DNA of 64,000 nt from Mytilus trossulus (lineage: Eukaryota): the NCBI RefSeq assembly GCF_036588685.1, contig NC_086382.1, positions 56,482,001-56,546,000 of the forward strand, given 5' to 3'. Below are positions 3,424-62,850 of this stretch, in pieces (position 1 is the first letter of the stretch; every line of letters starts with the position of its first letter). A model generated the notes under the pieces. The model was not told where the DNA came from. It made no database searches and was given only the letters and a program-made list of their open reading frames with translations. The position numbers were made by a program, and so were the translations under genes.

Positions 3424-3787
3424 TATGCCTTTTTGTGATTCTTCGTTACATTTGTTGTTTTTATAATGATATTAAGATGATAACACAATATTGACTGCTG
3501 TACCCCTATTTTGACATTTTTACTCTTTGAGTATGTTTGTTTTGTTCATACATCGTTGATAATGTAATGGAATTTGATGCGACTGTCATACAAGTGAGAG
3601 GTTTAGCTAGCTATAAACCAGGTTCGATCCACCATTTCTACATTAGAAAATGCCTGTACCAAGTCAGGAATATGACAGTTGTTATCCATTCGTTTGATGT
3701 GTTTGGACTTTTGATTTTGCCTTTTGATTTTTGATTTTCCTTTTTGAATTTTCCTCGGAGTTCAGTATTTTTGTGTTTTTACTTATT
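3424..3787 (+). repeat. Dispersed repeat family A (longest copy)
   Basis: Shares ggaatttgatgcgactgtcatacaagtgagaggtttagc...cctgtaccaagtcaggaatatgacagttg...ttcctcggagttcagtatttttgtg with copies at ~12347, 21855, 26440, 27783, 29145, 30040, 36243, 52330, 54935 and 57640. Strand is by convention only. Confidence 0.85.
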
Positions 3788-4791
3788 ATGTCATCTGAAA
3801 CAATAATGTTAGTTTAATGGTCTAGAATATTTTGTCTTGAGTATACTAGTACTCTGTATTTTGTTCCATTTCAAATTTTTATTTTAAAATTCTCCTTTTA
3901 TGAGAAAGCAATGAAAGACAACTATAAAAGCATGATATTGTTATGCATAGATGATACCCTATTTTTTTTTATTATTCGGTATTTTTATTTTGAATCGTGA
4001 TGATGTTAGTACTAATCTGATACCCCAAGAGAAGCTTTTCCTTTCGTAGAATTTTATATCAAATATTCATCGTCAAATGTTTAAAATTTCATATATATTA
4101 ATTTTGTCCAAATTGTCATTTAACTTCTTTATTAGATTGTCCCACGAGCTTCGACTTTTATAGCATCACGACATCTTTCAATAAAAAACTCGTGTATAAA
4201 AAAAATTACACTAAAATTATGAATAATAGAAAAATCATCAAACCTGCGAAGTTTATAATATACAGCATAATTAATTGAGCTTATAATTGTATTTTCAGTA
4301 AACATATATTTTATGTATGACCTTCGAGAATTAGTATGCTATCTTAATAATGGCTAATGTGACGGTTGTAACTTAAGTGCCATCAAAATCTATAGTAAGC
4401 ACAGTCACAAGGGGAAATTCTAAACTGTTAATTTGTCATAATGTTTCATATAATTTTTTGAATATTAGAGTATCCTTAATTTCCATATTGATCTATTAAA
4501 TATTTATTCTATATAACATGACTTGCAAGTTAGCTGCTTTATCATTATTCCAAATAATATGAAGATGAGGTAGTTTTTTTTCAATGTTGTCTGAACCTCG
4601 GTATATAATATTTATTTATTTATGCTTATTAACATATATGGGTAAAGCCAGGCTCACATTCTTCACTTTCATGTGTTTTGTTGTGTTGTTGCTTGTCATT
4701 GGTCTTTTTCTCCGCGACCATGGTGTGGTTTGTTTTCCTACGTTTTTTGATTGCTACCTTCAACTTTTTTATCCCTGTTTTTACTGTAATT

Positions 4792-10060: not shown

Positions 10061-12346
10061 AGTATGGTGTAGACTATGGAATACTTCTTGAACCAAAAGC
10101 ACTCTGTGAAACGCATCATTTGTATATGCAAAAGATAAAATAAGATATTAACTTCCATGACAATTCACTGCCGAAGAAGTGGCAAAATATATACATATTC
10201 TTCATTCTTGTCATTATAGAAGATAAACAACGTAAAAAGACAATTAAACAGGGAATGCATTATAATATTAAATCAATACGCTTGTTGGACAATGTTGGAG
10301 GTCTTACTTTTTGTTTTTTACATTGTAGATAAAACTTTTATAATCACAAATGGTCTTGATATAAACATTGTTTTTTCACTGACTCTAAAGAGAATAACAG
10401 AAACAGACTAATCCAATATAAGACTTTATATTCAGATGGATAAAACTAAACAGACCAACAAGAACCGTCAGTACGGAAATCAATAACTAAATCTGGACGT
10501 CATCTGAGAAGGATTATAGAGAACTGACAGATAGGGACACACAGTAATTGGTTATTTCCAAATCTGTCTTTATCAATCCACAAACCAATTGCCATGTCAT
10601 GCCTTATATTTATCAAAACGCTACATTGAAGCCGTCACAGAAAACGTGAGGATAGACCATCACAAACTTACAGTTTGATACTAAATTGACAATGATATTC
10701 ACGTATTCAGAAATATACATTAGAATAAAAATCTCACAGAAATATTGCAAGAATAAAATAGGAGACATAAGGCAGACATATCATCCCTGACATCAATATT
10801 TTCCTAAGTTAAGTAGATGCAAATATTAAAAAACGTAGCACAACCAAACCCGTCTTTCAATACATATACGAAAACAGAACTCGACATTGGTTAAATACTT
10901 TAAGCTTGCTTTCAAGACTTGTCGTCGTTTTACGTATTGTTTATAATTGCCATACTTGTACTTTATTATGATCTTGTCATTTATTCATTCGATATTACGG
11001 CGTTAGTCGACTTTTCTGTATGAACTTTTAAGCGCCTTTTAATTTTGTATTTGTATCTGTGGGGTGTTAATTGTTTCATTGGCGTTTTCTATACATTTAC
11101 TTCTACCATGTTCGGTTCCTACCCACACAACTGAACATGTTTTCATTTGACTATACATAGGATACATGTTAACAAGAATGTATAAAAGAGATGAACGTTG
11201 AAGACAGAAAATGAGACATTATTATACTTGTAGCAAGAACGATAATCCTTTTTGCATGATTAAGTACGAGTGGTCTGTATGGAATTACTGCGATATTTGT
11301 TTTCAATAACGAGCTAAAAATTCAGAACTAATTACATGTCGAGTTCTAATGCCGATCCCCGATCCCTAAATCAAACCAATTTTAATAAAAGATAATAATC
11401 TAAAGGGTTTTATTTTCTTAAGAACATATTATGAATTTTACAATCACTCTCTTGCGTCTTCTGATGCGCAAGTAATCCTATATAAGCATGACCATAAACC
11501 CTTACTCAAAGTTTCGTATTTGTTCTGTTTACTATTTACCACACACATATTGCATGTTGTAGACTTCAAGCATGTTAGAAACATATCTGATTCCACGTGT
11601 TGTTAGAGATTCAATTTGATGCGCATCTGATATTTTGTTTGCCATCTTTTGTGGTAAAAATAATCAGCCAGAAGAAATAAATATTTTGGATTTGAAGAAG
11701 GCAAATAAATATCTTCACCTAATCAGATTTCTTTCTGTAATACAAAAAAAAGGCGCAGATGTTAGAAAAAAATTGATCAAAATTTTTATAAAAATTATCC
11801 ATTTCATTTTGTGAAACTGACTAGAAAGTATTTTTGTTTATTACATTGCAAGCAAGCAAGCAATACAAATCCGTGTTCATAATTATTACAAATTTCATTT
11901 TTACACACGAAATGGTACGAAACCAGTCAGATATTTAGCTTTTTTACAACATAAACTATATTATCAAATTAAATATTGTGTATGCACGTGATAAATTGAA
12001 TAACTTATCTGGTTAACCGCTACAAATAGTTTAAATAAAACGGAAAAAGGTTTAACATAATAAAAAATAATCAAAGACGAAATTGGTTATAAAATATCCT
12101 GAAAATAAATGGAATAAAACATCCTACCGATTGCCACCCAAATGAGGATTTTTTTTTAACTAAAACACATCTGGAGGCAATATACGATTATTAAATATTT
12201 GAAACATATATTTACAATTTTTCAAGCTCTTAATTATCTCATGTTTGAAAGAGATGTGCAAACTAAATATTACTATAACTAGAATGTTGCTTTTTATTTT
12301 CTAAATAGCAAGTAACTAATATTACATGCATAAAACACATCAATCT

Positions 12347-12642
12347 AAAAAGTAAAATCACAAAAATACTGAACTCAGAGGAAAATCAATTTGGAAAGTC
12401 CATAATCACATGGCAAAATCAAAAAACAAAACGCATCAAAAACGAATGGACAAGAACTGTCATATTCCTGACTTGGTACAGGCATTTTCAAATGTAGAAA
12501 ATGGTGGATTAAACCTGGTTCTATAGCGCTAACCCTCTCACTTTAATAACAGTCTCATCAAATTCCGCTACATTTACATGATGCGTTAAATAGACAGTCA
12601 CAATTAATAAAATAGTCAAAATATGGGTACATCAGTCATCAT
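12347..12642 (-). repeat. Dispersed repeat family A
   Basis: Reverse-complement match to 3480-3787 (aaaagtaaaatcacaaaaatactgaactc...cctgacttggtacaggcattttc...aacctggtt). Confidence 0.85.
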
Positions 12643-14499: not shown

Positions 14500-14745
14500 G
14501 AAAAACTCATCATATATACCAGGATTACATTTTGTATTGACGCCAAAAGCGCATTTCTTCTAAAAAAGACTCACCAGTGACGCTCAAATCCCAAAAAGTT
14601 AAAGAGGCCAAATAAAGTACTAAGTTTTGCCAAACACAGCTAAGGTAATCTATTTCTGAGGTAGCTATAAGAAAAGCCTTAGTATTTCAAAAATTCAAAA
14701 GTTTTGAAAACAGTAAACTTATAAATATGACTGTATCAATGATAA
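14500..14745 (-). mobile_element. Partial retrozyme-like copy with a decayed hammerhead
   Basis: Minus strand 14540-14585 reads gagcgtca-ctggtga-gtc-ttttttagaa-gaaa-tgcgc-ttt-tggcgt; flanks match the 20438 copy (cctggtat..atgatgagttt; gattaccttagctg). Confidence 0.8.
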
Positions 14746-19904: not shown

Positions 19905-20700
19905 ATACCCGAGGGAGTAGCGTCCACCACTGTGTCGATGGCTGACAGTAATTGTCAGTGAGATTAACGCCAACCACTAGATTGATAGAGACGATTAATG
20001 ACTGAGGGAGTAATTTCCACCTCTGGATCAATGTCATTTTTAATTGAATGTTAATGTCACAGGATGTAGTAGTGTCCACCAATGGATCAAAATCATTGGT
20101 AATTGACGGTTAATGTCACAGGAAGTAATGTCCACCAATGTATCAAATTTATTAATAAAACATTGCTGGTTTCAATGACAGTAATGTCAGCCACCTAATC
20201 GATGTCATCAATGAATGGCGGCTGATGTCCGGGGGTGTAGCGTCTACCAATATATTGATGCCATTGATGTCTAACAGTTAATGGAGTTACGAAATCCACT
20301 CATCCAACGATTCCATTGATTGCGGATTGTTATATCCTAGGAAGTTATGTCATAAACGATGTCGTGATGCCTAGCAAATAATGCCCCATGAAGTTTCATC
20401 CATCACTAGATCTATGTTATTAATAACAAACGGAAAGGATTACCTTAGCTGTATTGGCGAAAATTTGAGGAATTTTGGTCCTCAATGCTCTGCAACTTCG
20501 TACTTTATTTGTCCTTTTTAACATTATTTTTTTCGAGCGTCACTGATGAGACTTTTGTAGACTAAACGCGCGTCTGTCGTCAATATGAAATTTCAATCCT
20601 GGTATCTATGATGAGTTTATTGATTGTCGATTGGGTTACGTCTTTAACTAGATTGATGCCATTGATGTCTGACCGGTACTACCCGAGGAAAAGATCCAAT
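19905..20700. repeat. Degenerate ~55-bp minisatellite interrupted by a retrozyme fragment
   Basis: Recurring gtccaccaatggatcaa..cattg..ttaatgtcacagga; attgatgccattgatgtct occurs both before (~20254) and after (~20652) the 20438-20621 insert. Confidence 0.65.
20438..20621 (+). mobile_element. 5'-truncated retrozyme-like copy with a mutated hammerhead
   Basis: 20537-20580: gcgtca-ctgatga-gac-ttttgta-gac-taaa-cgcgc-gtc-tgtcgt (GAAA changed to TAAA, stem II mismatch); upstream part matches 34238-34330. Confidence 0.85.
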
Positions 20701-26439: not shown

Positions 26440-26650
26440 AAATATCACAAAAATACCGAAACTCCGAGGAAAATCGAAAACAAGAAGTCCCTAATCAAAT
26501 GGCGAAATCAAACGCTGTAACACACCAAACTAATGGATAACAACGTCATATCTCTGACTTGGTACAGGTATTTTCTTTCGTAAAACATGATGCATTACAC
26601 ATGGTTTTGTAGCTAGCTAAACCTCTCACTTGTATGACAGTCTCATAATA
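26440..26650 (-). repeat. Dispersed repeat family A
   Basis: atcacaaaaataccgaaactccgaggaaaatc...ctgacttggtacagg...ctagctaaacctctcacttgtatgacagtc. Confidence 0.8.
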
Positions 26651-27075
26651 TTCTTAAAGTGATAATCGTTACAGACGTCGTTGTAACATTACTTCTCATA
26701 GTCACTGTCTTCCCATCTACCCTACCTTAAATTCATTCAACCAACTTGATTTACACTTATGACATACTCCCATTAAGAAACAATCCTCTAATTATCGATA
26801 AATGAAGCAGATATTTTAACATATTACCTAACATATTGATGGCTGTCAAAACCATATGTTTATCATTGTATTTTTACTAACTAACATACATGACATATGC
26901 TGTTACAATATATGACAACATATTCCGTTTATTGTCATTAAAAGTGTAAACTTGTTTCATTTTTTATAATATGATTTGCCAAAGTTGTCCATTTACATTA
27001 GATAAAAGACTTAAAGAATTAAAAAAAAGATCAAATTTATTTGCCAAGATAGCACATTCAGTCCTCTATTCTCAC

Positions 27076-27631: not shown

Positions 27632-27781
27632 TCACCACTCTTCTTTACTATACTGTTTATCATGTATTATTTGATATTTTCATCTCATCTTGTCATGTGT
27701 GTTTGTGTTATGTTATATGACTTTTGATGAACTTCTTTGTACCATTGTATCTTTATGGTGTTTAAGAAATAAAGAATCTTG
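27254..27781 (+). mobile_element. 5'-truncated LINE (non-LTR retrotransposon) 3' end
   Basis: ORF2 C-terminus, then a T-rich 3' UTR ending aaataaagaatctt, abutting a family-A copy. Confidence 0.85.
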
Positions 27782-27782
27782 T

Positions 27783-27965
27783 AAATATAACGGAATTTGA
27801 TGAGACTGTCGTACAAAGTGAAGGGTTTAGCGCTATAAAACTAAGTTGAACCCTCCATTTTCTACATTTGAAAATGCCTGAACCAAGTCAGGAACATGCC
27901 AGTTGTTGTCCATTCGTTTTTGATGTTTTGATTTTGAGGTCAGTTTTTTTGTGATTTAACTTTTT
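27783..27965 (+). repeat. Dispersed repeat family A
   Basis: ggaatttgatgagactgtc...cctgaaccaagtcaggaacatgccagttgttgtccattcg. Confidence 0.8.
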
Positions 27966-31072: not shown

Positions 31073-34000
31073 CTGAAAATTTCAAATGGTTAAAAATTCA
31101 GATTTAATGACTTAAATATCGAATCTAAAAGTAATTATTCAAATGAACCGTCAAACAAATGCACAAATCATTGCATGAAGATTGTAAACCTGTCAAATAT
31201 ATATATTGATAATGATTTTTTTTAAAGCAACTTTAAATACACGTGTAAAAATCATTTCAATTCATTTGACTTAGTTTAAGTCTGCAACCGTAAGATAAAA
31301 ATAGACAGAAAGAGTTTCTTACAATTGTAATGAGTAAAAAGTTGACGGAAATAAGACTTTTGGCAAGGGATTTTCATATAACCACATGTTAAACTGAAAA
31401 AAAGGCCAATATTACTATTGTATTATTTGGTGTAATATGTCTTAAAGGGAATATTATTATTCACCATTCGTTTTGAAAATGAAATTATTGGGGGTTTTTT
31501 CATGCCATTTTCTGTACAATTATTCAGTTTCATAGCAGTCACACTTCTGGTACAATATACAGACCTACAATGTACCACAAGAATGATGATACTACACACA
31601 TTCGATAATTAAATACAAATCAAACAGCAATATCTTATAGATTAAGTTACAGTAAAAAGAAATCAGGTTGATTGGCCTTCCAAGACCGTGCATGTTTTAA
31701 AAACTTCAGAAATATGAATGGTTTCCAAAGCATTTATACTAACCATTAACTTTTTAAAAAAAACCTCTAATTTGGGGAACTGACGTTATGGACTTACATG
31801 TTTAGTAAATTCAGGGAAATATGTTTTTCATAGTTTAGTTCGATTTTTTATTGTAATTTTGCATTTTTCTTCGCCCTCAGAATCATTTCGCTTTTAGAAC
31901 AAATGAAAGATAATACAATGACATTAACATTGTCTAATTAGAATATTCCAAGGACTTGTCTGCAAGTCTAGATCCGCACACACCAACTTTACAGAACTTG
32001 GAAGTATAACAATATGTAATGTAAAAACACATGCGAGGGTGGGACATAACTATCTAAGATAAATAAAAACCAAATTTTGATAAATGTAAATACATATATT
32101 TAAAATGTGTTTGATCCTTAATACCTTTTTGATTTTAATTTTCGACAAATTAAATATGTAGTGGGAAAGCTCATTTAATGTTTCCCATCGTGTGAATAAT
32201 ATATGGTTATAAAATGTTCAAAGCACCTTGTGACGTAATAAAAACTGTCTGATATAGATCATAGTTGGTGCAAAGAAGCTGAATTCTTTTAACCTTAGTA
32301 CAGACGGTAATAAAAATGATAAATTATACAATAGACAAAATAAAATACAAAATATGTTGCTTTAAAACAAAAGTCAAAAGATGAATAAATATTCTTTTTA
32401 CAAAGCAAAGTAAATATTGAACAAAAATGACACAATGAAACAATTGCAGCATATGTTAGAGTCACTATGGCAAGATTCGATCACGGTCCATTATACTCTT
32501 GTTAAATGCATACATTGTTCCTTGTCAATAAAAGTACAACTTTATCCTTGCAAGAGGGATATAATAAAGAAATGTTACACACATGTTAGTGTTAGTATGG
32601 ATATTATCGGCCCAGCATGATCCTAGTCAAAACCCAATCAACTGTTGTAATCTTCTTATTTTTTAAATTATCGATACAGGTGTTAGGCCAAGAAACTTGC
32701 GGTAATGTATTCCGCCTTTAAGTTTCATTTCATTTATTTTCTAGCCTCTCGAGGAATAGAATTTACAATAAAATCTTTTTTTCATTTGAACTACAACAAG
32801 AAAATTGCGTGGTAAGGTACAATATAGCAATGAAACTTTCAATTAAAGACGGAAATTTCATCGTTTTTTTCTTCAGGTTCACAAAAAATACACACGCAAC
32901 GAGTAAAAAATATAGATGGGAGAAAATTCGTTTGCCACTCTGTGAACTATAATTTGGCAAGTATTTCTTAATTAAATCGAGCTTATGCAATATAACCCTT
33001 GACAAAAAAAAATGTTAAAATATGTTATATATATAAAAATGCGATTGTTTTCTTTGAATATGCTTTTACACTATTGAGGATTTGTTGGAGTAGTTGTTAA
33101 GAATTATTTTAAACTATTCTTTTTCTATCTTTCTCTCCCGGGATCCATTGATTACAATAATGATAAACTCAAATTTATTTTGGTAATTTTTTAAAACTTT
33201 TTATTGGTTCGAGGTTTCACTGTATACACTCTTAGACTAATAAATGCTGATGAATACCCCCAATAAACATCATTAATAGTTCAATAATACAAAAATGCAG
33301 AAATTAAAAAAAAATCACTCATAAATTTTACTTTAACTTAATAATGTAAAATAATGACAAAAAAGGGGAAATTAAGTATGCCTTTTCATCCTAATATTTA
33401 ACACATTGTTTATATAAATACTTGATAAAAATCAGTCATGCTTCTTCAATATTATTCAATTAATATGGTTGCTGAAGCTAGAAAAGGTTTTAACACATGC
33501 AGTCTTTTGTTTTTACTTAAGCAATGGAAATCAAGAATCACGTTTTTTTAAATTATTCATAATATGAAGATATTATACATACACAATGTATTTAATCTCA
33601 TTATGTTCAGTATGCCCTTTTTTTTACCAATACACTGGGGTAAACATAGTGAATGTAATCTAATGTTCTGCTGCGAAGGCAAGGTACTCAATTAAATATA
33701 TTGTGTTTTAACAACACAGGTTAATGAGCAATAAATTAATAAATTAACAACATGAATGAGTTAGAGATTTACCGTCCCTTGTGTACCAAAACACTCTATC
33801 AATTCTGTGTATGTTTTCATGGTGCTGTTGTTGGTGTTTGGTGCACAATATTTCATGACTAAGATTTTCGTTCTCGGCACACATTCGAAAGACTGTTAGG
33901 TGATTAAATTATTAACAACTGACTGCATAATAGTATAATTTATTGTTTTAAAAATAGAACTACTTATATTAATGAAAAGACTTTTTCATAATCAATATAA

Positions 34001-34336
34001 TGCAGTATATATTGTTTATAGAATGGTATGTATACAAATGATAATTTCTTTCTGCATATGAATTACTGGGTCGATGCCACTGCTGGTGGACGTTTCGTCC
34101 CCGAGGGTATCACCAGCCCAGTAGTCAGCACTTCGGTGTTGACATGAATATCAATTATATGGTCATTTCTATAAATTTTCTGTTTACAAAACTTTTAATT
34201 TTTCGAAAAACTAAGGATTTTCTTACGCCCAGGAGTAGATTACCTTAGCCGTATTTGGCACAACTTTTATGAATTTTTGGGTCCTCAATGCTCTTCAACT
34301 TTGTATTTGTTTGGCATTTTAACTGTTTTGATCTGA

Positions 34337-34380
34337 GCGTCACTGATGAGTCTTATGTAGATTAAACGCGCGTCTGGCGT
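34337..34380 (+). ncRNA. Type I hammerhead ribozyme, core-mutated copy
   Basis: gcgtca-CTGATGA-gtc-ttatgta-gat-TAAA-cgcgc-GTC-tggcgt: G12 of GAAA replaced by T. Confidence 0.75.
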
Positions 34381-34693
34381 ATTAAATTATAATCCTGGTA
34401 CCTTTGATAACTATTAACACCACTGGGTCGATGCCACTGCTGGTGGATGTTTCGTCCCCGAGGGTATCACCAGCCCAGTAGTCAGCACTTCGGTGTTGAC
34501 ATGAATATCAATTATATGGTCATTTCTATAAATTTTCTGTTTACAAAACTTTTAATTTTTCGAAAAACTAAGGATTTTCTTACGCCCAGGAGTAGATTAC
34601 CTTAGCCGTATTTGGCACAACTTTTAGGAATTTTTGGGTCCTCAATGCTCTTCAACTTTGTATTTGTTTGGCATTTTAACTGTTTTGATCTGA

Positions 34694-34737
34694 GCGTCAC
34701 TGATGAGTCTTATGTAGACGAAACGCGCGTCTGGCGT
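34694..34737 (+). ncRNA. Intact minimal type I hammerhead ribozyme
   Basis: Stem I gcgtca/tggcgt; CTGATGA 34700-34706; stem II gtc/gac; GAAA 34720-34723; palindromic stem III ACGCGCGT; GTC triplet with predicted cleavage after 34731. Confidence 0.9.
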
Positions 34738-37700
34738 ATTAAATTATAATCCTGGTACCTTTGATAACTATTATGTTATTGTATATATAAAATACAAACA
34801 CGGGACCCGGTGATAGAGTAATGCAGTCACATTGACAGTTTTTAAGACGGTCCTCAAACATTTATGTATATCTATATAATTATATAGACAAAGGTAATTT
34901 TTGGAAAAATGATTAGAAATTTAAAAGCTATCAGATTATAAACAAATGACGACAATGCAACATGCGATACTGACTGAAACAACTGTATACGCAATAGTGC
35001 AAATTACCTTTTCTATCTTGAACGGTGAACATAATAAGGCTAGCTACCCTTTTCTTAATAGTGCAAACTTCCTTTCTTTAAAATCTTTACCCTATAAAAA
35101 GGACATTCATTGTCACTAGTTTTCAATTTCTTTTTATACATTTGATGTAGACAGGGCTAGTTCAGATCAATACATATTTCATATTACCTCTTTTAGTATT
35201 GGTCTATACATTTGTATTTCACGTTTGCAGTTCAACATAATAGAAAACCATTGAAATAACTCCACGGACAAATTTCAAAGTAATTTGAAAGAATTTATTT
35301 GAAAAGTTATTAAAAAACAACCATAAACAAATATTAAGATTTTAATCCAATTTACAGTTTCCTAAATAGTGCCCCTTGAGTACATTTCTTCTTAAGAAAT
35401 TTTCCACTTGCTTTCACCTTAGTCTTCTGTGTCAATAGAGCATTCTTATCAGGCGTGCAATATGGGCGACATTAAAAGATTTCTATTCAACACTGGATGA
35501 AAAGATAAAATAGCTGTAGCACACGTGCGAGCTAGGACTAGATGATAAAACCGGATTTAAAAGGTCTGCAATAATACACCAGGACATAAAACGCAGTAGA
35601 TTCGTACCTAGCTGGCTTATTAATTGTTTCATTATTTGTTCACTTAACAATAAAAAAGCAATTAATATTGATCTTTCATTGTGGTTGTCCGTGTGAAAAG
35701 AAATATGTAACAATTTCATAACTATTTTGAAAATGGTGTGTAAACAAGAAAACCTGTGGTTAGTGTTTATGTACTTCTAGATATAAACCCTAAGACAATG
35801 ATTGCCAAAAGAACAACAACATGTAGAAATATACCAATGACAAAAAGTTGTAAAATTAAACATCAACAAGTCGCCGTTCAAAAGGAAGACGATCACATGG
35901 TTACAAGATCCCGCCTTAACTGGGTCAGACAAATGAAGTATGAATCAAGGATATCAAGTCTGCAAGCTTTCCCTTAACACAAGACAGTGTAAACTAGCTA
36001 CCATCGAAAAGATGTCGTTTTCCCTCATCCTTACTGCAGTTTTCTTAGGGTGGTTCAGTGATATCGCCATAACAACAACATACTGTAGCATTAATAGAAT
36101 CAACTAAGATATGTGAACACCACAGGAAAAGGAACAGGATCTCTGCGGTAAAAGAACAGGGTAATAATACAGACAAAAAATATTAAAAAAATACCAAACG
36201 GCCAAGTTTTATTCAAAAAGGGGCAAGTCGATAAAACATAACCAAATCAAACGTTCGACTATATCAACATACTGAACAAATGGAAAACATATTGTCATAT
36301 ATCTGACTTTGTTCAAGAAGCTGCCGAGTTCAGCCTGGTTTAATAGCTAGCCAAACCTCCCACTTCTATGACATTCCGTTATATCGTGAAATATTTAGAT
36401 AAGCAAAACTGTGTGAGCAACAAAAACAGACTTAATCGGTAAAGTAACATTAATTGGAACCCAGCAGTCACAACTGTTAAGATATATCACAGACATACAC
36501 ACATACAATGAACTTAAAACAAATCAAACAAACATAATGATAAATTTGACAAATTATAGACTCCAACAAAAAGTGTGTTTTAGTTGATAGTACAGTAAAA
36601 ACAATTTCTATTACACTTTGATGATGGGCACACAAATAGTAAAATATAAATGCATGATCATACAAAATGTTACCACTGGCAACACTATTTATACTAATGC
36701 GACCGAATCGTTTCTCTGAAACCATCTGCAACGGAAACGCTTTAGTATGAGAAGGTTGTTCCAAAAACTCTCTGTATCATTCAAATTAGTTTTAAATTAA
36801 CGGTATACCAGATGGTTCTTAGTACAAACAAGTTATTTACCTAATCTGCTCCAATGAATATTTATAAACAATGTCAGAATACTGTCATTGTAGGAAAGGG
36901 CAGTGACCACATGGTGCACTTTTATTTGTGTTCGATGTTTTATTTTTTTGTTGTTCTGGTGTAGAGTATAGTAAAATATACACAATAAAGACATGTATTA
37001 CTGTAATGCAATAACGCATTGTTATTGTTATGTTTGTGACCGTGATTTTGCCGATCTCTCGTTGATTTATGAATTTTGATTCTCCCTATGGTATCTTCCC
37101 CTTTTACATATCCTAAACAAGTTTCATTCCTAAAAAAATGCTGTTGGTTATCTTCTTTTCATAGTTGAGTTTGGTTGACATCTTTTTTCATACTATCATA
37201 AAGACATGCAAATATAAATGATTGCTACTGGGTTAATTATAAGTTTGAAGCTAGGATTTATATAAATAATAGTACAGACATTCCAGGTCGATTTTTGAAC
37301 TACAAAAAGTACTACTGCAATGTTTAATAATTCACTAACTAAGGATATTCTCAAAAATGAATTCATATGCAGCTATCTTGCATGGATTCAAATAAAAACA
37401 ACTACTACCCATAAAAGGAGAAATTGTCAATGAAACAAAAGATCTACTACACACATCATATCTCAGTGGTTATACGGTAATCTAGAATTGACACCCATTG
37501 ATTATATAGAAAGCCACATTCGTAGTTTTGGCTATGCTCTACGTGACTTGATGGCTACGAAGCGAAACATAGCCAATACCCAACATTCTATACAGTGGGT
37601 AGCACCAGAGTGTTAATGACAACACTATTACGAATTTATCTAAAAGGATGCCATCCTACACTCTAATATCAACGGCTGTACTTTGAGTATTTTCTCTACA

Positions 37701-52100: not shown

Positions 52101-52329
52101 GAAGAGTTTTTTTCTGGTTTTATGTTTATCAGGAAGGCTCAAATCTAAGTATTTGAAAGGATGAAGAAGAAACGAAACAGTTGTGGATCAATATGAACAA
52201 AAGGGTCATAAAATTATAGTCAAATCCATTTAAGATCGACTTTGCTTGGGGGAGCTGAAATCTCAACTGAAACAATTCTACATTATTAAGCAAATAAATA
52301 TTGTTTCACCAAAAACAAGTTCTGTTCTT

Positions 52330-52422
52330 GATGTGTTTTGTTATTTGATTTTGCAATGTGATTATGGACTTTCCGATTAGATTTTCCTCTAAGTTCAGTA
52401 TTTTTGTGATTTTACTTTTTTC
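52330..52422 (+). repeat. Dispersed repeat family A (terminal fragment)
   Basis: ttgattttgcaatgtgattatggactttccgattagattttcctctaagttcagtatttttgtgattttactttt is the reverse complement of 12347-12430. Confidence 0.8.
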
Positions 52423-55400
52423 TTATGATGAAAAAAAACAAAACAATGAATATTGTAAAAATTAATTTATGTCCTAAAATGCACCATCATAATTTTATTG
52501 TAGAAATAAAATATTTAAAATGGTCATACAAATGACGATCGGTTATAATATAAATAAAATACATGTTTCTTAAATATATAAATACATATTTCTTAAAAAC
52601 ATTCCAAACAAAATTCAAAAATTATATATATCATTATAATGACAATATGTTCAATAATTCTAGCATGAAAAATCATTGGATATAAATAATGGCTGAATCT
52701 GAATAGAATGGGACGATTATAGGGTTAACATAAAGGTTAACATAACTCTGGTAAATAAATTATTAAATACATTGGTTATTTTTGATAGATTAATTACATT
52801 TGTTAATGACAGAGTATGCTCCTACCTTTGAAACAGCAAGAAATCCCATAAATACAATGTAATCGTACAGTAACACAATACTAGTTCTTTTGTAATAAAG
52901 TCATAAACGAAGTCAAGTTGTTACTTTCAGAACACTTCAACTTTATTTAATTTGAATGAAATTACCATATATCACAAAAATTATACATGAATGAAATATT
53001 AATTATTCGTAAAATTGTTGTTATAGTTCAAACGATTTTCCTGCTTTAATTTTGATCGTATATTCAAATTTTATTCATATTGGTCCGATTATCAGTTTCC
53101 CGTCATTAGATTCTTTCATCTTAAACGTGTAAATCAAACAACTATGGAAGAGTATATTGTACATTTTGTTACATAAAATAAGTATTTAGTTAAATATTAT
53201 TATTATTTATTAATCTAAATATCATAAAGACTTTTTTCTGAACCTTGAAAATATTAATCATTTTCCAAATTTTTAACGTCGTTTTCACAACTACATCCGA
53301 AGTATAGATTTGTTACATTTAAGAAGCAAAACATGAAATATTTTGCATTGAATTGAACCGAAATTCAATTGATACCTGGTGAAAATAGAGTTTCAATTAA
53401 ATATAAATTGTTCCCATCAACCATTGCGAGTAGAATGTTGATTTGTAAATGACCTTAGCCTCTGCATAGGTTTGGAAATGACAATAAAAACAAATTTATC
53501 ATCTCATAATATAAAGAATTGTCGATGCCGGTAGAGAATCTATATTAATGGCTGGCACACACATTTCAAAGGCTAAACACTCCAATGAAACACAATTATT
53601 GTAACGACAATTTTAAACTCAACCCTGCAGACAGTTTATTTGAAGGTCAGTTTATAAGCAACATGAAAGGTCAAAAATGTTTGGTACAACTACAGCATGT
53701 TTACAAAAAAATAAAATGAATATACTCCAAGACATGTGTCTATTGAATATTTACATCAGTGTTTTTTAGGAGGGGGGGGGGGGGGGGGGGTTCTACAATT
53801 TTTCATCATAACATAAAACAAAAAACTTACAAAAAAGAGCTGGGGATATTAAACAGTGAACAACCAAAACAACTGCTGAAAGAATGTTAAACAATAATCA
53901 AACTTTCAAATAAATTTATATATGTGATACATATATATAACTATAAAGCAAAAATGCATACAAAAACTTGACAAAACTAACGAAATTTATTTAACCATTA
54001 CTCATTGATTTGATTTTATTTTAAGAAATATATACTAAAGTGACAAAATCTTAAAAAAAGAATAAAATAGCAATATATATATATATATATTTCAACAAAA
54101 CGCAAAGAGAAAAGCACAGATTGAATTTAAAAAATGATATTTTTGTTACATGTTTGACAAATTAAAAAAAACATCTCTTGGTTGTAAGATATTATTCCCT
54201 TATCGTATTAAATATTCCTTTATTATCTTCTAGATAGAATAATGCATTTCAAGACATGTAAAACTTACAAAAGAGTATAAAATTTGATAGTATGGAAAAT
54301 AAAGAACTAATTATCTTTCTAGACAATAAGAAGCTAATAATTTTTTGTCAATACAAAATCATTCACAAACGTGATTTGTAGACTAGTTTAATTTTGTTTC
54401 GATGATGTTTTTCCTGGTTGCAAAGAATTTTTAAGGACGATTGATTAGATAAGTTAGACAAATTATCAAAAATAAAAAATAAAAAATAGCAAGAAGGAAA
54501 ATAAAAAAAAATTTCAAAGAGAAAATACAATCATGTGAGGTTTATCAACCGATCATACTTTTGTAAAAAAATCGGAACACAATACAATTTGGCGATAATT
54601 TAAAGCAGGATTCATTACATATTCAAATATGCACACACAAAATATATAATTTAACAAAGGTCAATGTCTATGTATTGATTTTGGGTTTTTCCTGCTACAG
54701 TTCAACCCATATGTGTTTTAATATTGTTTACTCCATAACAAAATATTATAATATAAACGGAAAAAAAACCAAAAATACAGCCAGAAAAATCCCTCGATCA
54801 TAACAGACTGAGAATGTTGGGGAGCAGATCAGTTATCTTCTTAAATATAACTTATCATTATCGTGCTTATGTTTCGATCTTAAACCGTAAGTAATAAACT
54901 CATCAATCAAAAGAGTGCGAAAAAAATATATTAACAAAACTACCGAACTCCAAGGACAATTCTGAATAGATGTCCCTTAACAAATTCAAAATCAAAAGCT
55001 CAAACACATCAAACGAATGAATTTTTTATAGGTCAATCATAACTTTTCCAGAAAGACAGTTAATACAATGATAGAGGAATCAACTTTTTGAATGAACAAA
55101 CACAAGTCCACCAAACACAACCCAGAAACATTTGAGATTCAGAGAGCAACGAAACCTGAAAGGTAAGCAGTTCATATTCCTCCATTAAGGAGGTCTGCAA
55201 TTAGCCAAAAAAATGTTGTTCTTTATTTTCATTCATTCATTCATTATTTAGCTCGACATTTCATTGATCTTTGATTATAAAAATGAATTTCTAGGCAATA
55301 AATTCCTGCGTTTTGAGATAAAACGTATTTTGATTTATTAAAGTATACTATAAAAAGAAACATGTTTGTTCACCCCGACCCTCAAATATATTTGTCATTT

Positions 55401-62490: not shown

Positions 62491-62850
62491 AGACGAATCG
62501 CGTACTTCCGTATCGAAATATAAACCTTGTACCGTTGATAATTATTTACGCCACTGGAACCCGAGCATATCACTAGCCCAGTAGTATCAATTCGGTGTTG
62601 ACATGAATATCAACTATATGGCCATATTTATAAATGTTTGCAAAAGTAAGAATTATTGAAAAACTAAGGATTACATTGGCCGTAGTTGGCACAACTTTTT
62701 TGAATTTTGGGTCTTCAGTGCTCTTCAACTTTGTACCTGTTTGATTTTTTAACTATTTTGATCTGACCGTCACTGATGAGTCTCATGTAGACATGTAGAC
62801 GAAACGCGCGTCTTGGGTTTCGAAATATAAGCCTGGTACCTTAACTATTA
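62491..62850 (+). mobile_element. Retrozyme-like copy, slightly more than one unit
   Basis: Starts with the 3' half of a decayed hammerhead (agacgaatcgcgt), crosses the unit junction (gataattatttacgccactgg), follows the 34422 unit with deletions and ends cctggtaccttaactatta. Confidence 0.88.
62767..62818 (+). ncRNA. Hammerhead motif with intact core, lengthened stem II and damaged stem I
   Basis: ccgtca-CTGATGA(62773-62779)-gtctcatgtagacatgtagac-GAAA(62801-62804)-cgcgc-GTC-ttgggt. Confidence 0.65.

What the first reader, a model, noticed from the sequence alone, without database searches (positions are those of the whole stretch)
34065..34773. Tandem 357-bp non-coding retroelement carrying hammerhead ribozymes (retrozyme-like, potential circular RNA source)
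Seen: two almost identical 357-bp units, each with a hammerhead motif; unit 2 has all conserved core nucleotides, stems I and II, and a minimal stem III. Established: minimal type I hammerheads in tandem repeats typify Penelope-associated elements and metazoan non-LTR retrozymes, whose multimeric transcripts self-cleave to monomers that can circularise. I recall such elements being reported from mussels, so the class is probably known even if this locus is unannotated. Inference: this is a young insertion of a self-cleaving, non-autonomous RNA element, with predicted cuts after 34374 and 34731, 357 nt apart.
Basis: partly seen in the sequence, partly recalled or inferred. Interest (0 to 1): 0.9.

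Follow-up and report, generated by a model that had tools for sequence, protein, structure and literature searches.

The report
Known mussel hammerhead retrozyme, two-unit copy
This is one young, two-unit genomic copy of the hammerhead-ribozyme "retrozyme" retroelement already described and tested in Mytilus mussels; it is real but ordinary, and one of its two ribozymes has since been killed by mutation.

Summary
Positions 34065-34773 are 1.99 head-to-tail copies of a 357-bp non-coding unit (4 substitutions between units). Each unit matches the type I hammerhead model: 34694-34737 at 33.0 bits with every core base intact, and 34337-34380 at 25.2 bits. The interpretation also holds, but the element is known. 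It belongs to the Mytilus galloprovincialis retrozyme family of Cervera & de la Peña 2020, whose cloned unit differs in the ribozyme by one loop base. That family has published self-cleavage, RtcB circularisation and circRNA northern blots. This scan already holds 287 notes on hammerhead retrozymes in this genome.

New details:
- Unit 1 carries a private CG>TT change (34362-63) that removes catalytic G12, so the locus now has one live core.
- Stem III is an 8-nt palindrome, and two ribozyme segments co-fold into the classical double hammerhead (-31.5 vs 2 x -10.0 kcal/mol).
- 42 of 55 independent arrays end 38-46 nt past the cleavage site, while their 5' ends are scattered. This fits target-primed reverse transcription from a fixed site on a circular or multimeric RNA.
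- A 29-nt match to a Naiad Penelope-like element is an embedded retrozyme fragment, not a shared terminus.

The parts
34065..34773 (+). Whole insertion: 1.99 units of the 357-bp retrozyme. It is 5'-truncated at monomer position q48 and ends at q42 (q1 = first base after the ribozyme cut).
   Evidence: TRF; blast of the monomer against the locus; both 400-bp flanks are single copy in the 1.3-Gb genome.
34065..34374 (+). Unit 1, 5'-truncated (q48-q357). It carries 3 private derived changes at 34270 and 34362-34363.
   Evidence: the 69 other family units read G, C and, in 68 of 69, G at these three positions.
34375..34731 (+). Full cut-to-cut monomer (q1-q357), the RNA that would be released and circularised. 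It has one private change at 34448.
   Evidence: 95-100% identical to at least 150 listed genomic matches.
34732..34773 (+). Terminal 42 nt (q1-q42) after the last cleavage site. This is the canonical 3' end of arrays of this family.
   Evidence: 42 of 55 distinct array ends fall at q38-q46; all 14 complete arrays listed end at q39-q46.
34337..34380 (+). Hammerhead 1, inactive core (GACGAAAC has become GATTAAAC at 34362-63; G12 and C11.1 lost). Cleavage site 34374|34375.
   Evidence: Rfam 25.2 bits. This variant was seen only in this locus among 75 distinct ribozyme sequences.
34694..34737 (+). Hammerhead 2, all core positions intact. Cleavage site 34731|34732. Stem III plus loop forms the palindrome ACGCGCGU.
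   Evidence: Rfam 33.0 bits, E 3.9e-6; identical to 57 of 70 full family units; double-hammerhead co-fold.
34422..34499 (+). GC-rich conserved domain (q48-q125, 57.7% GC against about 31% for the AT-rich rest), including a C(UUCG)G-capped hairpin. It is also present at 34065-34142.
   Evidence: Composition and conservation. RNAalifold gives a covariation term of only -0.07, so the structure is not proven.
34744..34772 (+). 29-nt 3'-terminal segment (q13-q41; also at 34387-34415). A copy of it sits embedded in the 3' UTR of a young Naiad-type Penelope-like subfamily.
   Evidence: local score 43 against a shuffle maximum of 33; searches show it is internal in the Naiad.

Best explanation
The stretch is a dispersed genomic copy of the Mytilus non-LTR retrozyme, a non-coding, non-autonomous retroelement. 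For the family, the published life cycle runs as follows. Tandem units are transcribed. The type I hammerheads, whose 2-bp stem III with a palindromic loop favours a two-ribozyme (double-hammerhead) fold, cut after GUC. [quoted passage not shown] A borrowed reverse transcriptase, probably from a Penelope-like element, copies that RNA into tandem cDNA that integrates elsewhere. The insertion anatomy seen here refines the last step. Copying starts at a fixed template position about 41 nt downstream of the cleavage site, runs around a circular (or along a multimeric) template, and stops at a variable point. This gives 3'-anchored, 5'-truncated arrays; the present one covers q48 through one full unit to q42. 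Both units were identical at insertion. Since then unit 1 acquired CG>TT, destroying G12, so the locus has one live core. It is probably a decaying copy rather than an efficient source of circles. Shown: the sequence anatomy, family membership, copy number, the 3' anchoring and the private nature of the killing mutation. Taken from the literature: cleavage, ligation and circRNA abundance. Inferred: the template form, the start site of reverse transcription, the identity of the enzyme, and the present inactivity of this locus.
For: Repeat and ribozyme. Family: at least 193 scored matches at 95-100% identity on many chromosomes, including long arrays. All 30 loci brought in by Rfam-positive hammerheads elsewhere in the genome are diverged members (76-96%) of the same family. 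The published M. galloprovincialis clone shares the ribozyme (one loop-2 base differs) and long blocks of the unit. Published experiments: kobs about 0.1/min, circRNA northern blots, RtcB ligation. Dimeric mode: co-fold -31.5 kcal/mol with trans stem I and an 8-bp stem III, against -10.0 per monomer and -6.7 for the single-hammerhead fold; same principle in PMC4209133. 3' anchoring. Unique flanks. Private mutations. No ORF of 80 aa or more overlaps the element. GC is 39.2%.
Against: The monomer's predicted fold is no more stable than shuffles (z -0.76). Ribozyme stems are invariant, so there is no covariation support. The conservation excess is modest (0.55% against 1.36% variable cells) and not significant in the small unbiased diverged set (6 units, p 0.44). 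No target-site duplication was seen. No hammerhead-bearing autonomous element with matching ends was found in the 20 Penelope-like loci examined.
Confidence: 0.9

Rival explanations
1. The locus is still a working circRNA source. In the double-hammerhead fold the live core of unit 2 cuts unit 1's site (34374|34375). In the alternative single-hammerhead fold it cuts its own site (34731|34732). Together the two cuts would release the 357-nt monomer 34375-34731.
For: The co-fold of unit 1 and unit 2 segments gives the same double-hammerhead architecture at -30.5 kcal/mol. In that fold each core faces the other copy's GUC; this follows from hammerhead geometry (Forster et al. 1988, cited). The published mussel clone, carrying a single hammerhead, self-cleaves at about 0.1/min (construct).
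Against: The single-hammerhead fold of unit 2 is disfavoured (-6.7 against an MFE of -10.0 kcal/mol). The two segments are 357 nt apart, and in the full 709-nt MFE both adopt other local pairings. No promoter or transcript evidence exists for this locus.
Confidence: 0.25
2. The retrozyme is mobilised by the Naiad-type (N-terminal GIY-YIG) Penelope-like element of this genome, recognised through a shared 3' end.
For: 29 nt of the retrozyme 3' end (q13-q41) recur at 90-93% identity, ending at the same base, next to a Naiad family with DKA and CxC motifs. That segment belongs to the Naiad unit: it lies 1773-1777 nt downstream of the RT segment in two copies and 2003-2006 nt upstream in two others. 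Other notes of this scan read it this way.
Against: The segment is followed by the same Naiad sequence in 450 places against 20, and 481-483 copies run on for at least 62-115 nt. The Naiad's own fixed 3' end lies about 417 nt further on, near L070:995. Diverged Naiad units lack the 27 nt (L069, L043), whereas old retrozyme copies keep it. The simplest reading is a very short 5'-truncated retrozyme insertion that hitch-hiked in a young Naiad subfamily. No other similarity to the Naiad terminus was found.
Confidence: 0.2
3. It is a local tandem duplication or satellite fragment with a relic ribozyme motif, not a retrotransposed element.
For: Long arrays exist elsewhere, and unequal crossover can change unit number. 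The 2026 preprint favours local amplification for array growth.
Against: The flanks are unique, yet the insert is 99-100% identical to copies on many chromosomes. 42 of 55 arrays share the same 3' end with scattered 5' ends, which duplication in place does not produce.
Confidence: 0.03

Closest known systems
Mytilus galloprovincialis non-LTR retrozyme (Cervera & de la Peña, NAR 2020, PMC7229834; constructs Rtz/DRtz_Mg353)
   Same: Same unit size class (350-390 bp) and the same type I hammerhead (one loop-2 base differs from the printed clone). It shares the GC-rich block and several AT-rich blocks, and has the same tandem, non-coding, low-GC organisation.
   Different: The printed clone belongs to a sister subfamily: after the cleavage site it reads ...CTATGATGAGTTTAT..., a variant also present in this genome. 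The host assembly here is unnamed. A 99% match of a neighbouring protein fragment to M. trossulus suggests a Mytilus species.
Newt satellite 2 / axolotl retrozymes and the double-hammerhead mode (Forster et al. 1988; PMC7229834; PMC4209133)
   Same: Type I hammerhead with a 1-2 bp helix III capped by a palindromic loop, in about 330-350-bp tandem units. The dimeric fold is predicted here too.
   Different: There is no sequence relationship. The mussel ribozyme lacks the loop 1/loop 2 tertiary contacts (paper's statement), and the mussel clone cleaves appreciably from a construct carrying a single hammerhead.
Hammerheads in pseudo-LTRs of Penelope-like elements, and vertebrate retrozymes as their derivatives (PMC4209133; preprint 10.64898/2026.07.22.740005)
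   Same: Ribozyme-bearing repeats that occur head to tail, with 5' truncation and no poly(A). A dependence on PLE reverse transcriptase is proposed.
   Different: No ORF is attached here. In the 20 PLE loci sampled from this genome, no PLE carried this ribozyme or these ends as its own terminus. The preprint tested Xenopus, not molluscs.
Non-autonomous head-to-tail derivatives of Naiad/Chlamys elements (e.g. MRC1; Craig et al. 2021, PMC8557442)
   Same: Short non-coding units inserted as multicopy head-to-tail arrays and 3'-anchored. A ribozyme-free 259-305-bp unit of this kind accompanies the Naiad here.
   Different: Those share their 3' end with the autonomous partner and have no ribozyme. 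The retrozyme has a ribozyme and no demonstrated shared end.
Plant LTR retrozymes
   Same: Non-autonomous, hammerhead-processed, circRNA intermediates.
   Different: Plant elements have type III hammerheads inside LTRs, PBS/PPT, 4-bp TSDs, high GC and Gypsy-dependent mobilisation. None of these features is present here.

Membership tests
Metazoan non-LTR retrozyme (Cervera & de la Peña 2020) | A type I hammerhead with conserved core in the repeat unit | tested here: met
   Unit 2: full core, 33.0 bits. Unit 1: core mutated at G12/C11.1.
Metazoan non-LTR retrozyme (Cervera & de la Peña 2020) | Head-to-tail repeats of about 150-450 bp, from dimers to long multimers | tested here: met
   357 bp x 1.99 here; arrays of at least 20 units elsewhere.
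Metazoan non-LTR retrozyme (Cervera & de la Peña 2020) | No LTR/PBS/PPT, no coding capacity, low GC (<45-50%) | tested here: met
   No ORF of 80 aa or more overlaps the element; the unique flanks start directly at the repeat; GC 39.2%.
Metazoan non-LTR retrozyme (Cervera & de la Peña 2020) | Many dispersed near-identical copies (mobile element) | tested here: met
   At least 193 scored matches and 3266 first-look candidates, on many contigs.
Metazoan non-LTR retrozyme (Cervera & de la Peña 2020) | Expressed as unit-length linear and circular RNA | not testable with these tools
Shown for the family in M. galloprovincialis by northern blot and RT-PCR.
Published Mytilus retrozyme family specifically | Sequence homology to the cloned M. 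galloprovincialis unit | tested here: met
   Comparison was by inspection of the clone printed: the ribozyme is identical except for one loop-2 base, and the GC-rich block and several other blocks are shared. No computed alignment was made, because the clone exists only as typed text.
Rfam RF00163 Hammerhead_1 | Bit score at or above the gathering threshold (34) | tested here: not met
   33.0 and 25.2 bits, and nothing at gathering. Forty-two scored hammerhead matches elsewhere in the genome reach 34.8-40.9 bits. The 30 fetched as loci are all copies of this family.
Dimeric (double-hammerhead) type I ribozymes | Helix III of 1-2 bp with a palindromic loop; the dimer fold is favoured over monomers | tested here: met
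   A-U and C-G pairs plus a GCGC loop form the palindrome ACGCGCGU. Co-fold -31.5 against 2 x -10.0 kcal/mol. Dimer-dependent cleavage itself is not testable here.
Autonomous Penelope-like element or its pseudo-LTR | Adjacent RT + GIY-YIG ORF, or the unit being the terminus of such an element | tested here: not met
   No ORF lies nearby and the flanks are unique. The sampled Naiad and C-terminal-EN PLE families end in other sequence.

The most novel reading that the evidence does not exclude
The fixed 3' boundary, 38-46 nt downstream of the ribozyme cut and combined with scattered 5' ends, marks a defined internal start site for target-primed reverse transcription on a circular (or template-jumped) retrozyme RNA. 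If so, the released linear monomer is not the template that is primed at its end. The word searches run on the two key papers found no mention of truncated or bounded array ends. The 27-29-nt retrozyme fragment that ends at the same position inside a currently amplifying Naiad subfamily could even be a template-switch product made inside a Naiad particle. That would point to the enzyme responsible.
Probability: 0.4. Interest if true: 0.45.

Novelty: already known. Interest (0 to 1): 0.2.

Why it matters
For annotation: default Rfam thresholds miss this copy by one bit, so such elements stay unlabelled in mussel assemblies even though they give rise to abundant circRNAs. For mechanism: the 3'-anchored, 5'-truncated architecture is a cheap genome-wide observable that constrains how retrozyme RNA is reverse-transcribed. 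The asymmetric dimer (one dead and one live core sharing a palindromic stem III) is a natural construct for testing cross-cleavage. None of this changes the classification, and the locus itself is one ordinary copy among very many.

Tried and rejected
1. The Rfam scan of the whole window at gathering thresholds gave no hits. The ribozymes appear only in E-value mode.

3. Fetching full Penelope-like elements failed. I did not try to obtain those letters by other tools, and worked from coordinates and pattern counts only.

4. Naiad partner by a shared 3' end: pursued in detail and rejected for this family. The motif is internal in the Naiad, absent from older Naiad units and ancient in the retrozyme.

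5. A C-terminal-EN PLE family (L061, L068, L077-L080) ends about 200 nt after its stop codon next to (TA)n, with no Rfam hammerhead. The retrozyme fragment near L078 lies about 870 nt beyond that end.

6. A metagenome scan for the Naiad-type motif gave 0 hits.

7. Covariation tests gave little. The ribozyme stems are invariant, and the GC-rich domain has a covariation term of -0.07.

8. Thermodynamic stability of the monomer gave z -0.76, so it is not exceptional.

9. Target-site duplication or empty site: none is visible, and the flanks are single copy, so there is no paralogous empty site.

10. An apparent TA preference just after the 3' end was withdrawn. Most family members read T at q42 where this copy reads A, so many of the apparent 'q41 + TA' ends are really element sequence.

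11. tRNA-like origin: ARAGORN found nothing.
Full report
**Observation.** Tandem Repeats Finder reports one array in 32-37 kb: 34065-34773, period 357, 2.0 copies, 98% matches, score 1390. Aligning 34065-34421 with 34422-34778 shows 4 substitutions in the 352 columns that belong to both units. After that the second unit runs into unrelated flank.

At gathering thresholds Rfam finds nothing in the 64-kb window. In E-value mode on 33900-34950, Hammerhead_1 (RF00163) matches 34694-34737 (+) at 33.0 bits (E 3.9e-6; gathering score 34) and 34337-34380 (+) at 25.2 bits. Read against the standard numbering, unit 2 has:
- stem I, GCGUCA/UGGCGU;
- the core C3-A9, CUGAUGA;
- stem II, GUCU/AGAC, with loop UAUGU;
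- G12 A13 A14;
- stem III, A15.1-U16.1 and C-G closed by GCGC;
- C17, followed by the cut 34731|34732.

Unit 1 reads GAUUAAAC where unit 2 reads GACGAAAC. It therefore lacks C11.1 and the catalytic G12. Its GUC site at 34374|34375 is intact. The only correction is that unit 1's ribozyme is not competent.

**What it is.** The window lies on contig C10 of a 1.30-Gb assembly. The cut-to-cut monomer 34375-34731 has at least 193 scored matches (3266 first-look candidates) at 95-100% identity on many contigs. These range from 1.1-unit copies to arrays of more than 20 units. A genome-wide search with RF00163 gave 42 scored hits above the gathering score (34.8-40.9 bits). All 30 loci fetched for them are diverged (76-96%) members of the same family.

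The literature search led to Cervera & de la Peña 2020 (PMC7229834). They describe about 5000 type I hammerheads in M. galloprovincialis within 350-390-bp repeats. They report self-cleavage at about 0.1/min, circRNAs on northern blots (especially in gonad and mantle), and RtcB-mediated circularisation of a monomer from construct DRtz_Mg353. Their supplement prints the cloned unit. By inspection it shares with this window the ribozyme (one loop-2 base differs), the block beginning CACTGGGTCGATGCC and running to CCAGCCCAGTAGTCAGC, and several AT-rich blocks. I made no computed alignment, because that clone exists only as typed text.

The unit has 39.2% GC, and no ORF of 80 aa or more overlaps the element. 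Every testable defining feature of metazoan non-LTR retrozymes is met. The one exception is the Rfam score, which this copy misses by one bit. A protein fragment from a neighbouring transposon is 99% identical to a Mytilus trossulus entry, consistent with a Mytilus genome.

**State of this locus.** Both 400-bp flanks are single copy in the genome. This is therefore a dispersed insertion into unique DNA, not part of a satellite block. Against 69 other full units:
- unit 1 carries three private derived bases (34270 G>T; 34362-63 CG>TT);
- unit 2 carries one (34448 C>T, at a CpG);
- both units share the minority base A at q42.

The two units were therefore identical when inserted and have since diverged by about 0.6% per site. 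The ribozyme-killing GAUUAAAC variant occurs nowhere else among 75 distinct ribozyme sequences collected. The locus arrived with two good ribozymes and now has one.

**How the ribozyme probably works.**
- Stem III plus its loop is the palindrome ACGCGCGU.
- A 58-nt segment around the ribozyme prefers a non-hammerhead fold (-10.0 kcal/mol) over the single-hammerhead fold (-6.7).
- Two such segments co-fold at -31.5 kcal/mol into the classical double hammerhead. Stem I forms in trans, each stem II is local, and stem III is an 8-bp intermolecular helix.

This is the mode proposed for newt and viroid ribozymes and for most metazoan type I motifs. In that fold each core faces the other copy's GUC. 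In a transcript of this locus, unit 2's core could therefore still cut after 34374, while the site after 34731 would depend on the weaker single fold. The unit 1/unit 2 co-fold keeps the same architecture at -30.5 kcal/mol. Whether this yields any unit-length RNA is untested. I rate the locus as probably decaying (about 0.6) rather than productive (about 0.25).

**Conservation.**
- Among 70 distinct full units, 57 have a ribozyme identical to unit 2.
- Variable cells are 0.55% in the ribozyme against 1.36% elsewhere, despite several CpGs in the ribozyme.
- In diverged copies the variation concentrates in loop 2, while core and stems stay fixed.
- Most diverged copies were ascertained through the ribozyme. 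The six that were not show 90.3% against 85.4% identity, which is not significant.
- The stems do not vary, so there is no covariation evidence.
- The whole monomer folds no better than shuffles (z -0.76).

**Insertion architecture.** In coordinates where q1 is the first base after the cut, the arrays whose ends lie within L001-L030 end at q39-46, and their 5' ends are scattered over the whole unit, for example at q5, 33, 48, 71, 88, 163, 182, 233, 284, 315 and 320. Over all 60 retrozyme loci, 42 of 55 distinct 3' ends fall at q38-46. About 1.4 would be expected if ends were uniform. Several of the exceptions belong to a sister subfamily that simply diverges there. There is no poly(A) and no visible target-site duplication.

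This 3'-anchored, 5'-truncated pattern is the signature of target-primed reverse transcription. Because the anchor lies about 41 nt past the ribozyme cut, the ribozyme-released linear monomer cannot be the template primed at its own 3' end. A circle, an uncleaved multimer, or a re-opened circle with template jumping would fit. Word searches of the 2020 paper and of the 2026 preprint on vertebrate retrozymes (10.64898/2026.07.22.740005) found no mention of truncated or bounded array ends. Another follow-up of this scan noted a fixed internal 3' end for a 566-bp family. I withdrew an apparent TA preference after the boundary. The family majority reads T at q42, so many apparent 'q41 + TA' ends are element sequence.

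**Search for the autonomous partner.** A six-frame GIY-YIG search found 149 matches with open frames up to 1067 aa. One family (L064-L076) has the nuclease N-terminal (residues 179-271 of an open frame of more than 771 aa) and carries the DKA and CxC motifs that define Naiads (Craig et al. 2021).

Upstream of its ORF, three copies contain 29 nt that are 90-93% identical to retrozyme q13-41 and end at the same base. The local score is 43, against a maximum of 33 in 500 shuffles. Coordinates show that the segment belongs to the Naiad unit. It lies 1773 and 1777 nt downstream of the RT segment in two copies, 2003-2006 nt upstream of it in two others, and 4332 nt apart on either side of the L069 element.

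It is not the Naiad terminus, for four reasons:
- It is followed by the same Naiad base in 450 places against 20.
- 481 and 483 copies continue for at least 62 and at least 115 nt.
- The next landmark 18-mer occurs 2006 times. It is followed 961 times by another 259-305-bp mini-unit and 679 times by a roughly 300-bp block whose own 3' end is fixed near L070:995 while its 5' starts vary. One Naiad copy's homology begins exactly there.
- Diverged units of the same Naiad (in L069 and L043) join ...AAAATTGTT directly to TGTATGCAC... without the 27 nt, whereas retrozyme copies as diverged as 76-85% keep the segment at their 3' end.

The economical reading is a very short 5'-truncated retrozyme insertion in the 3' UTR of a Naiad that later amplified. 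A template switch inside a Naiad particle remains possible but is not required.

A second, C-terminal-nuclease PLE family ends about 200 nt after its stop codon, next to (TA)n. It has no Rfam hammerhead and no similarity to the retrozyme. The mobilising enzyme therefore remains unidentified. This contradicts, for the 357-bp family, earlier notes of the scan that its ends look like those of a Naiad.

**Limits.** After that I used only coordinates and pattern counts from the window's genome. The sample of arrays is biased towards copies most similar to the query, or with the best ribozymes.

**Verdict.** Interest is low. The residual value lies in the 3'-anchoring observation and in the natural dead/live ribozyme dimer.

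Noticed in passing
window 62491-62850 (+), 20438-20612 (+), 14509-14744 (-): Three older, degraded fragments of the same retrozyme family (69-83% identity). Their ribozymes carry an 8-nt duplication, a G12>T change, or several core changes. The first still ends at the canonical 3' boundary.
   Followed up: partly
window 12346-12642 (-), 3492-3788 (+), and nine shorter pieces (e.g. 26441-26653, 27770-27935, 52324-52423): A roughly 300-bp repeat identical to L070/L074:699-995, with variable 5' starts and a fixed 3' end near position 995. It is probably the 3'-terminal part of the Naiad-type element, or a short element sharing its tail. There are eleven pieces in 64 kb.
   Followed up: partly
L074:56-693; many genomic places (e.g. 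C1:31494423-31495252): A ribozyme-free 259-305-bp unit repeated head to tail next to Naiad copies. Its landmark 18-mer occurs 2006 times in the genome. It looks like a non-autonomous Naiad derivative of the kind described for Chlamys elements.
   Followed up: partly
L069:550-578, L070:550-578, L074:245-273 and 550-578; at least 450 genomic places: A young (about 99% identical) Naiad subfamily carries a 27-29-nt retrozyme-derived segment in its 3' UTR / pseudo-LTR. Older units of the same Naiad lack it.
   Followed up: yes
window 34422-34499 (and 34065-34142): The GC-rich domain of the unit (57.7% GC) stays 88-92% identical in copies that are 76-84% identical overall. It contains a C(UUCG)G hairpin. 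In that hairpin 12 sequences change G-U to A-U, and one young copy (L019:300-386) has a C-G to A-U double change. It also holds GGGTCGATGCC, which resembles a Pol III B box, but T-runs inside the unit argue against Pol III transcription of multimers.
   Followed up: partly
L061, L068, L077-L080 (oriented positions 1765-1973): A canonical C-terminal GIY-YIG Penelope-like family whose copies lose homology about 200 nt after the stop codon, beside a (TA)n-like tract. No hammerhead was detected by the Rfam models.
   Followed up: partly
P0075: A 535-aa Mytilus trossulus protein entry is 99% identical to part of the Naiad ORF of this genome. This hints that the assembly is a Mytilus species and that this transposon is annotated there as a host gene.
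   Followed up: no
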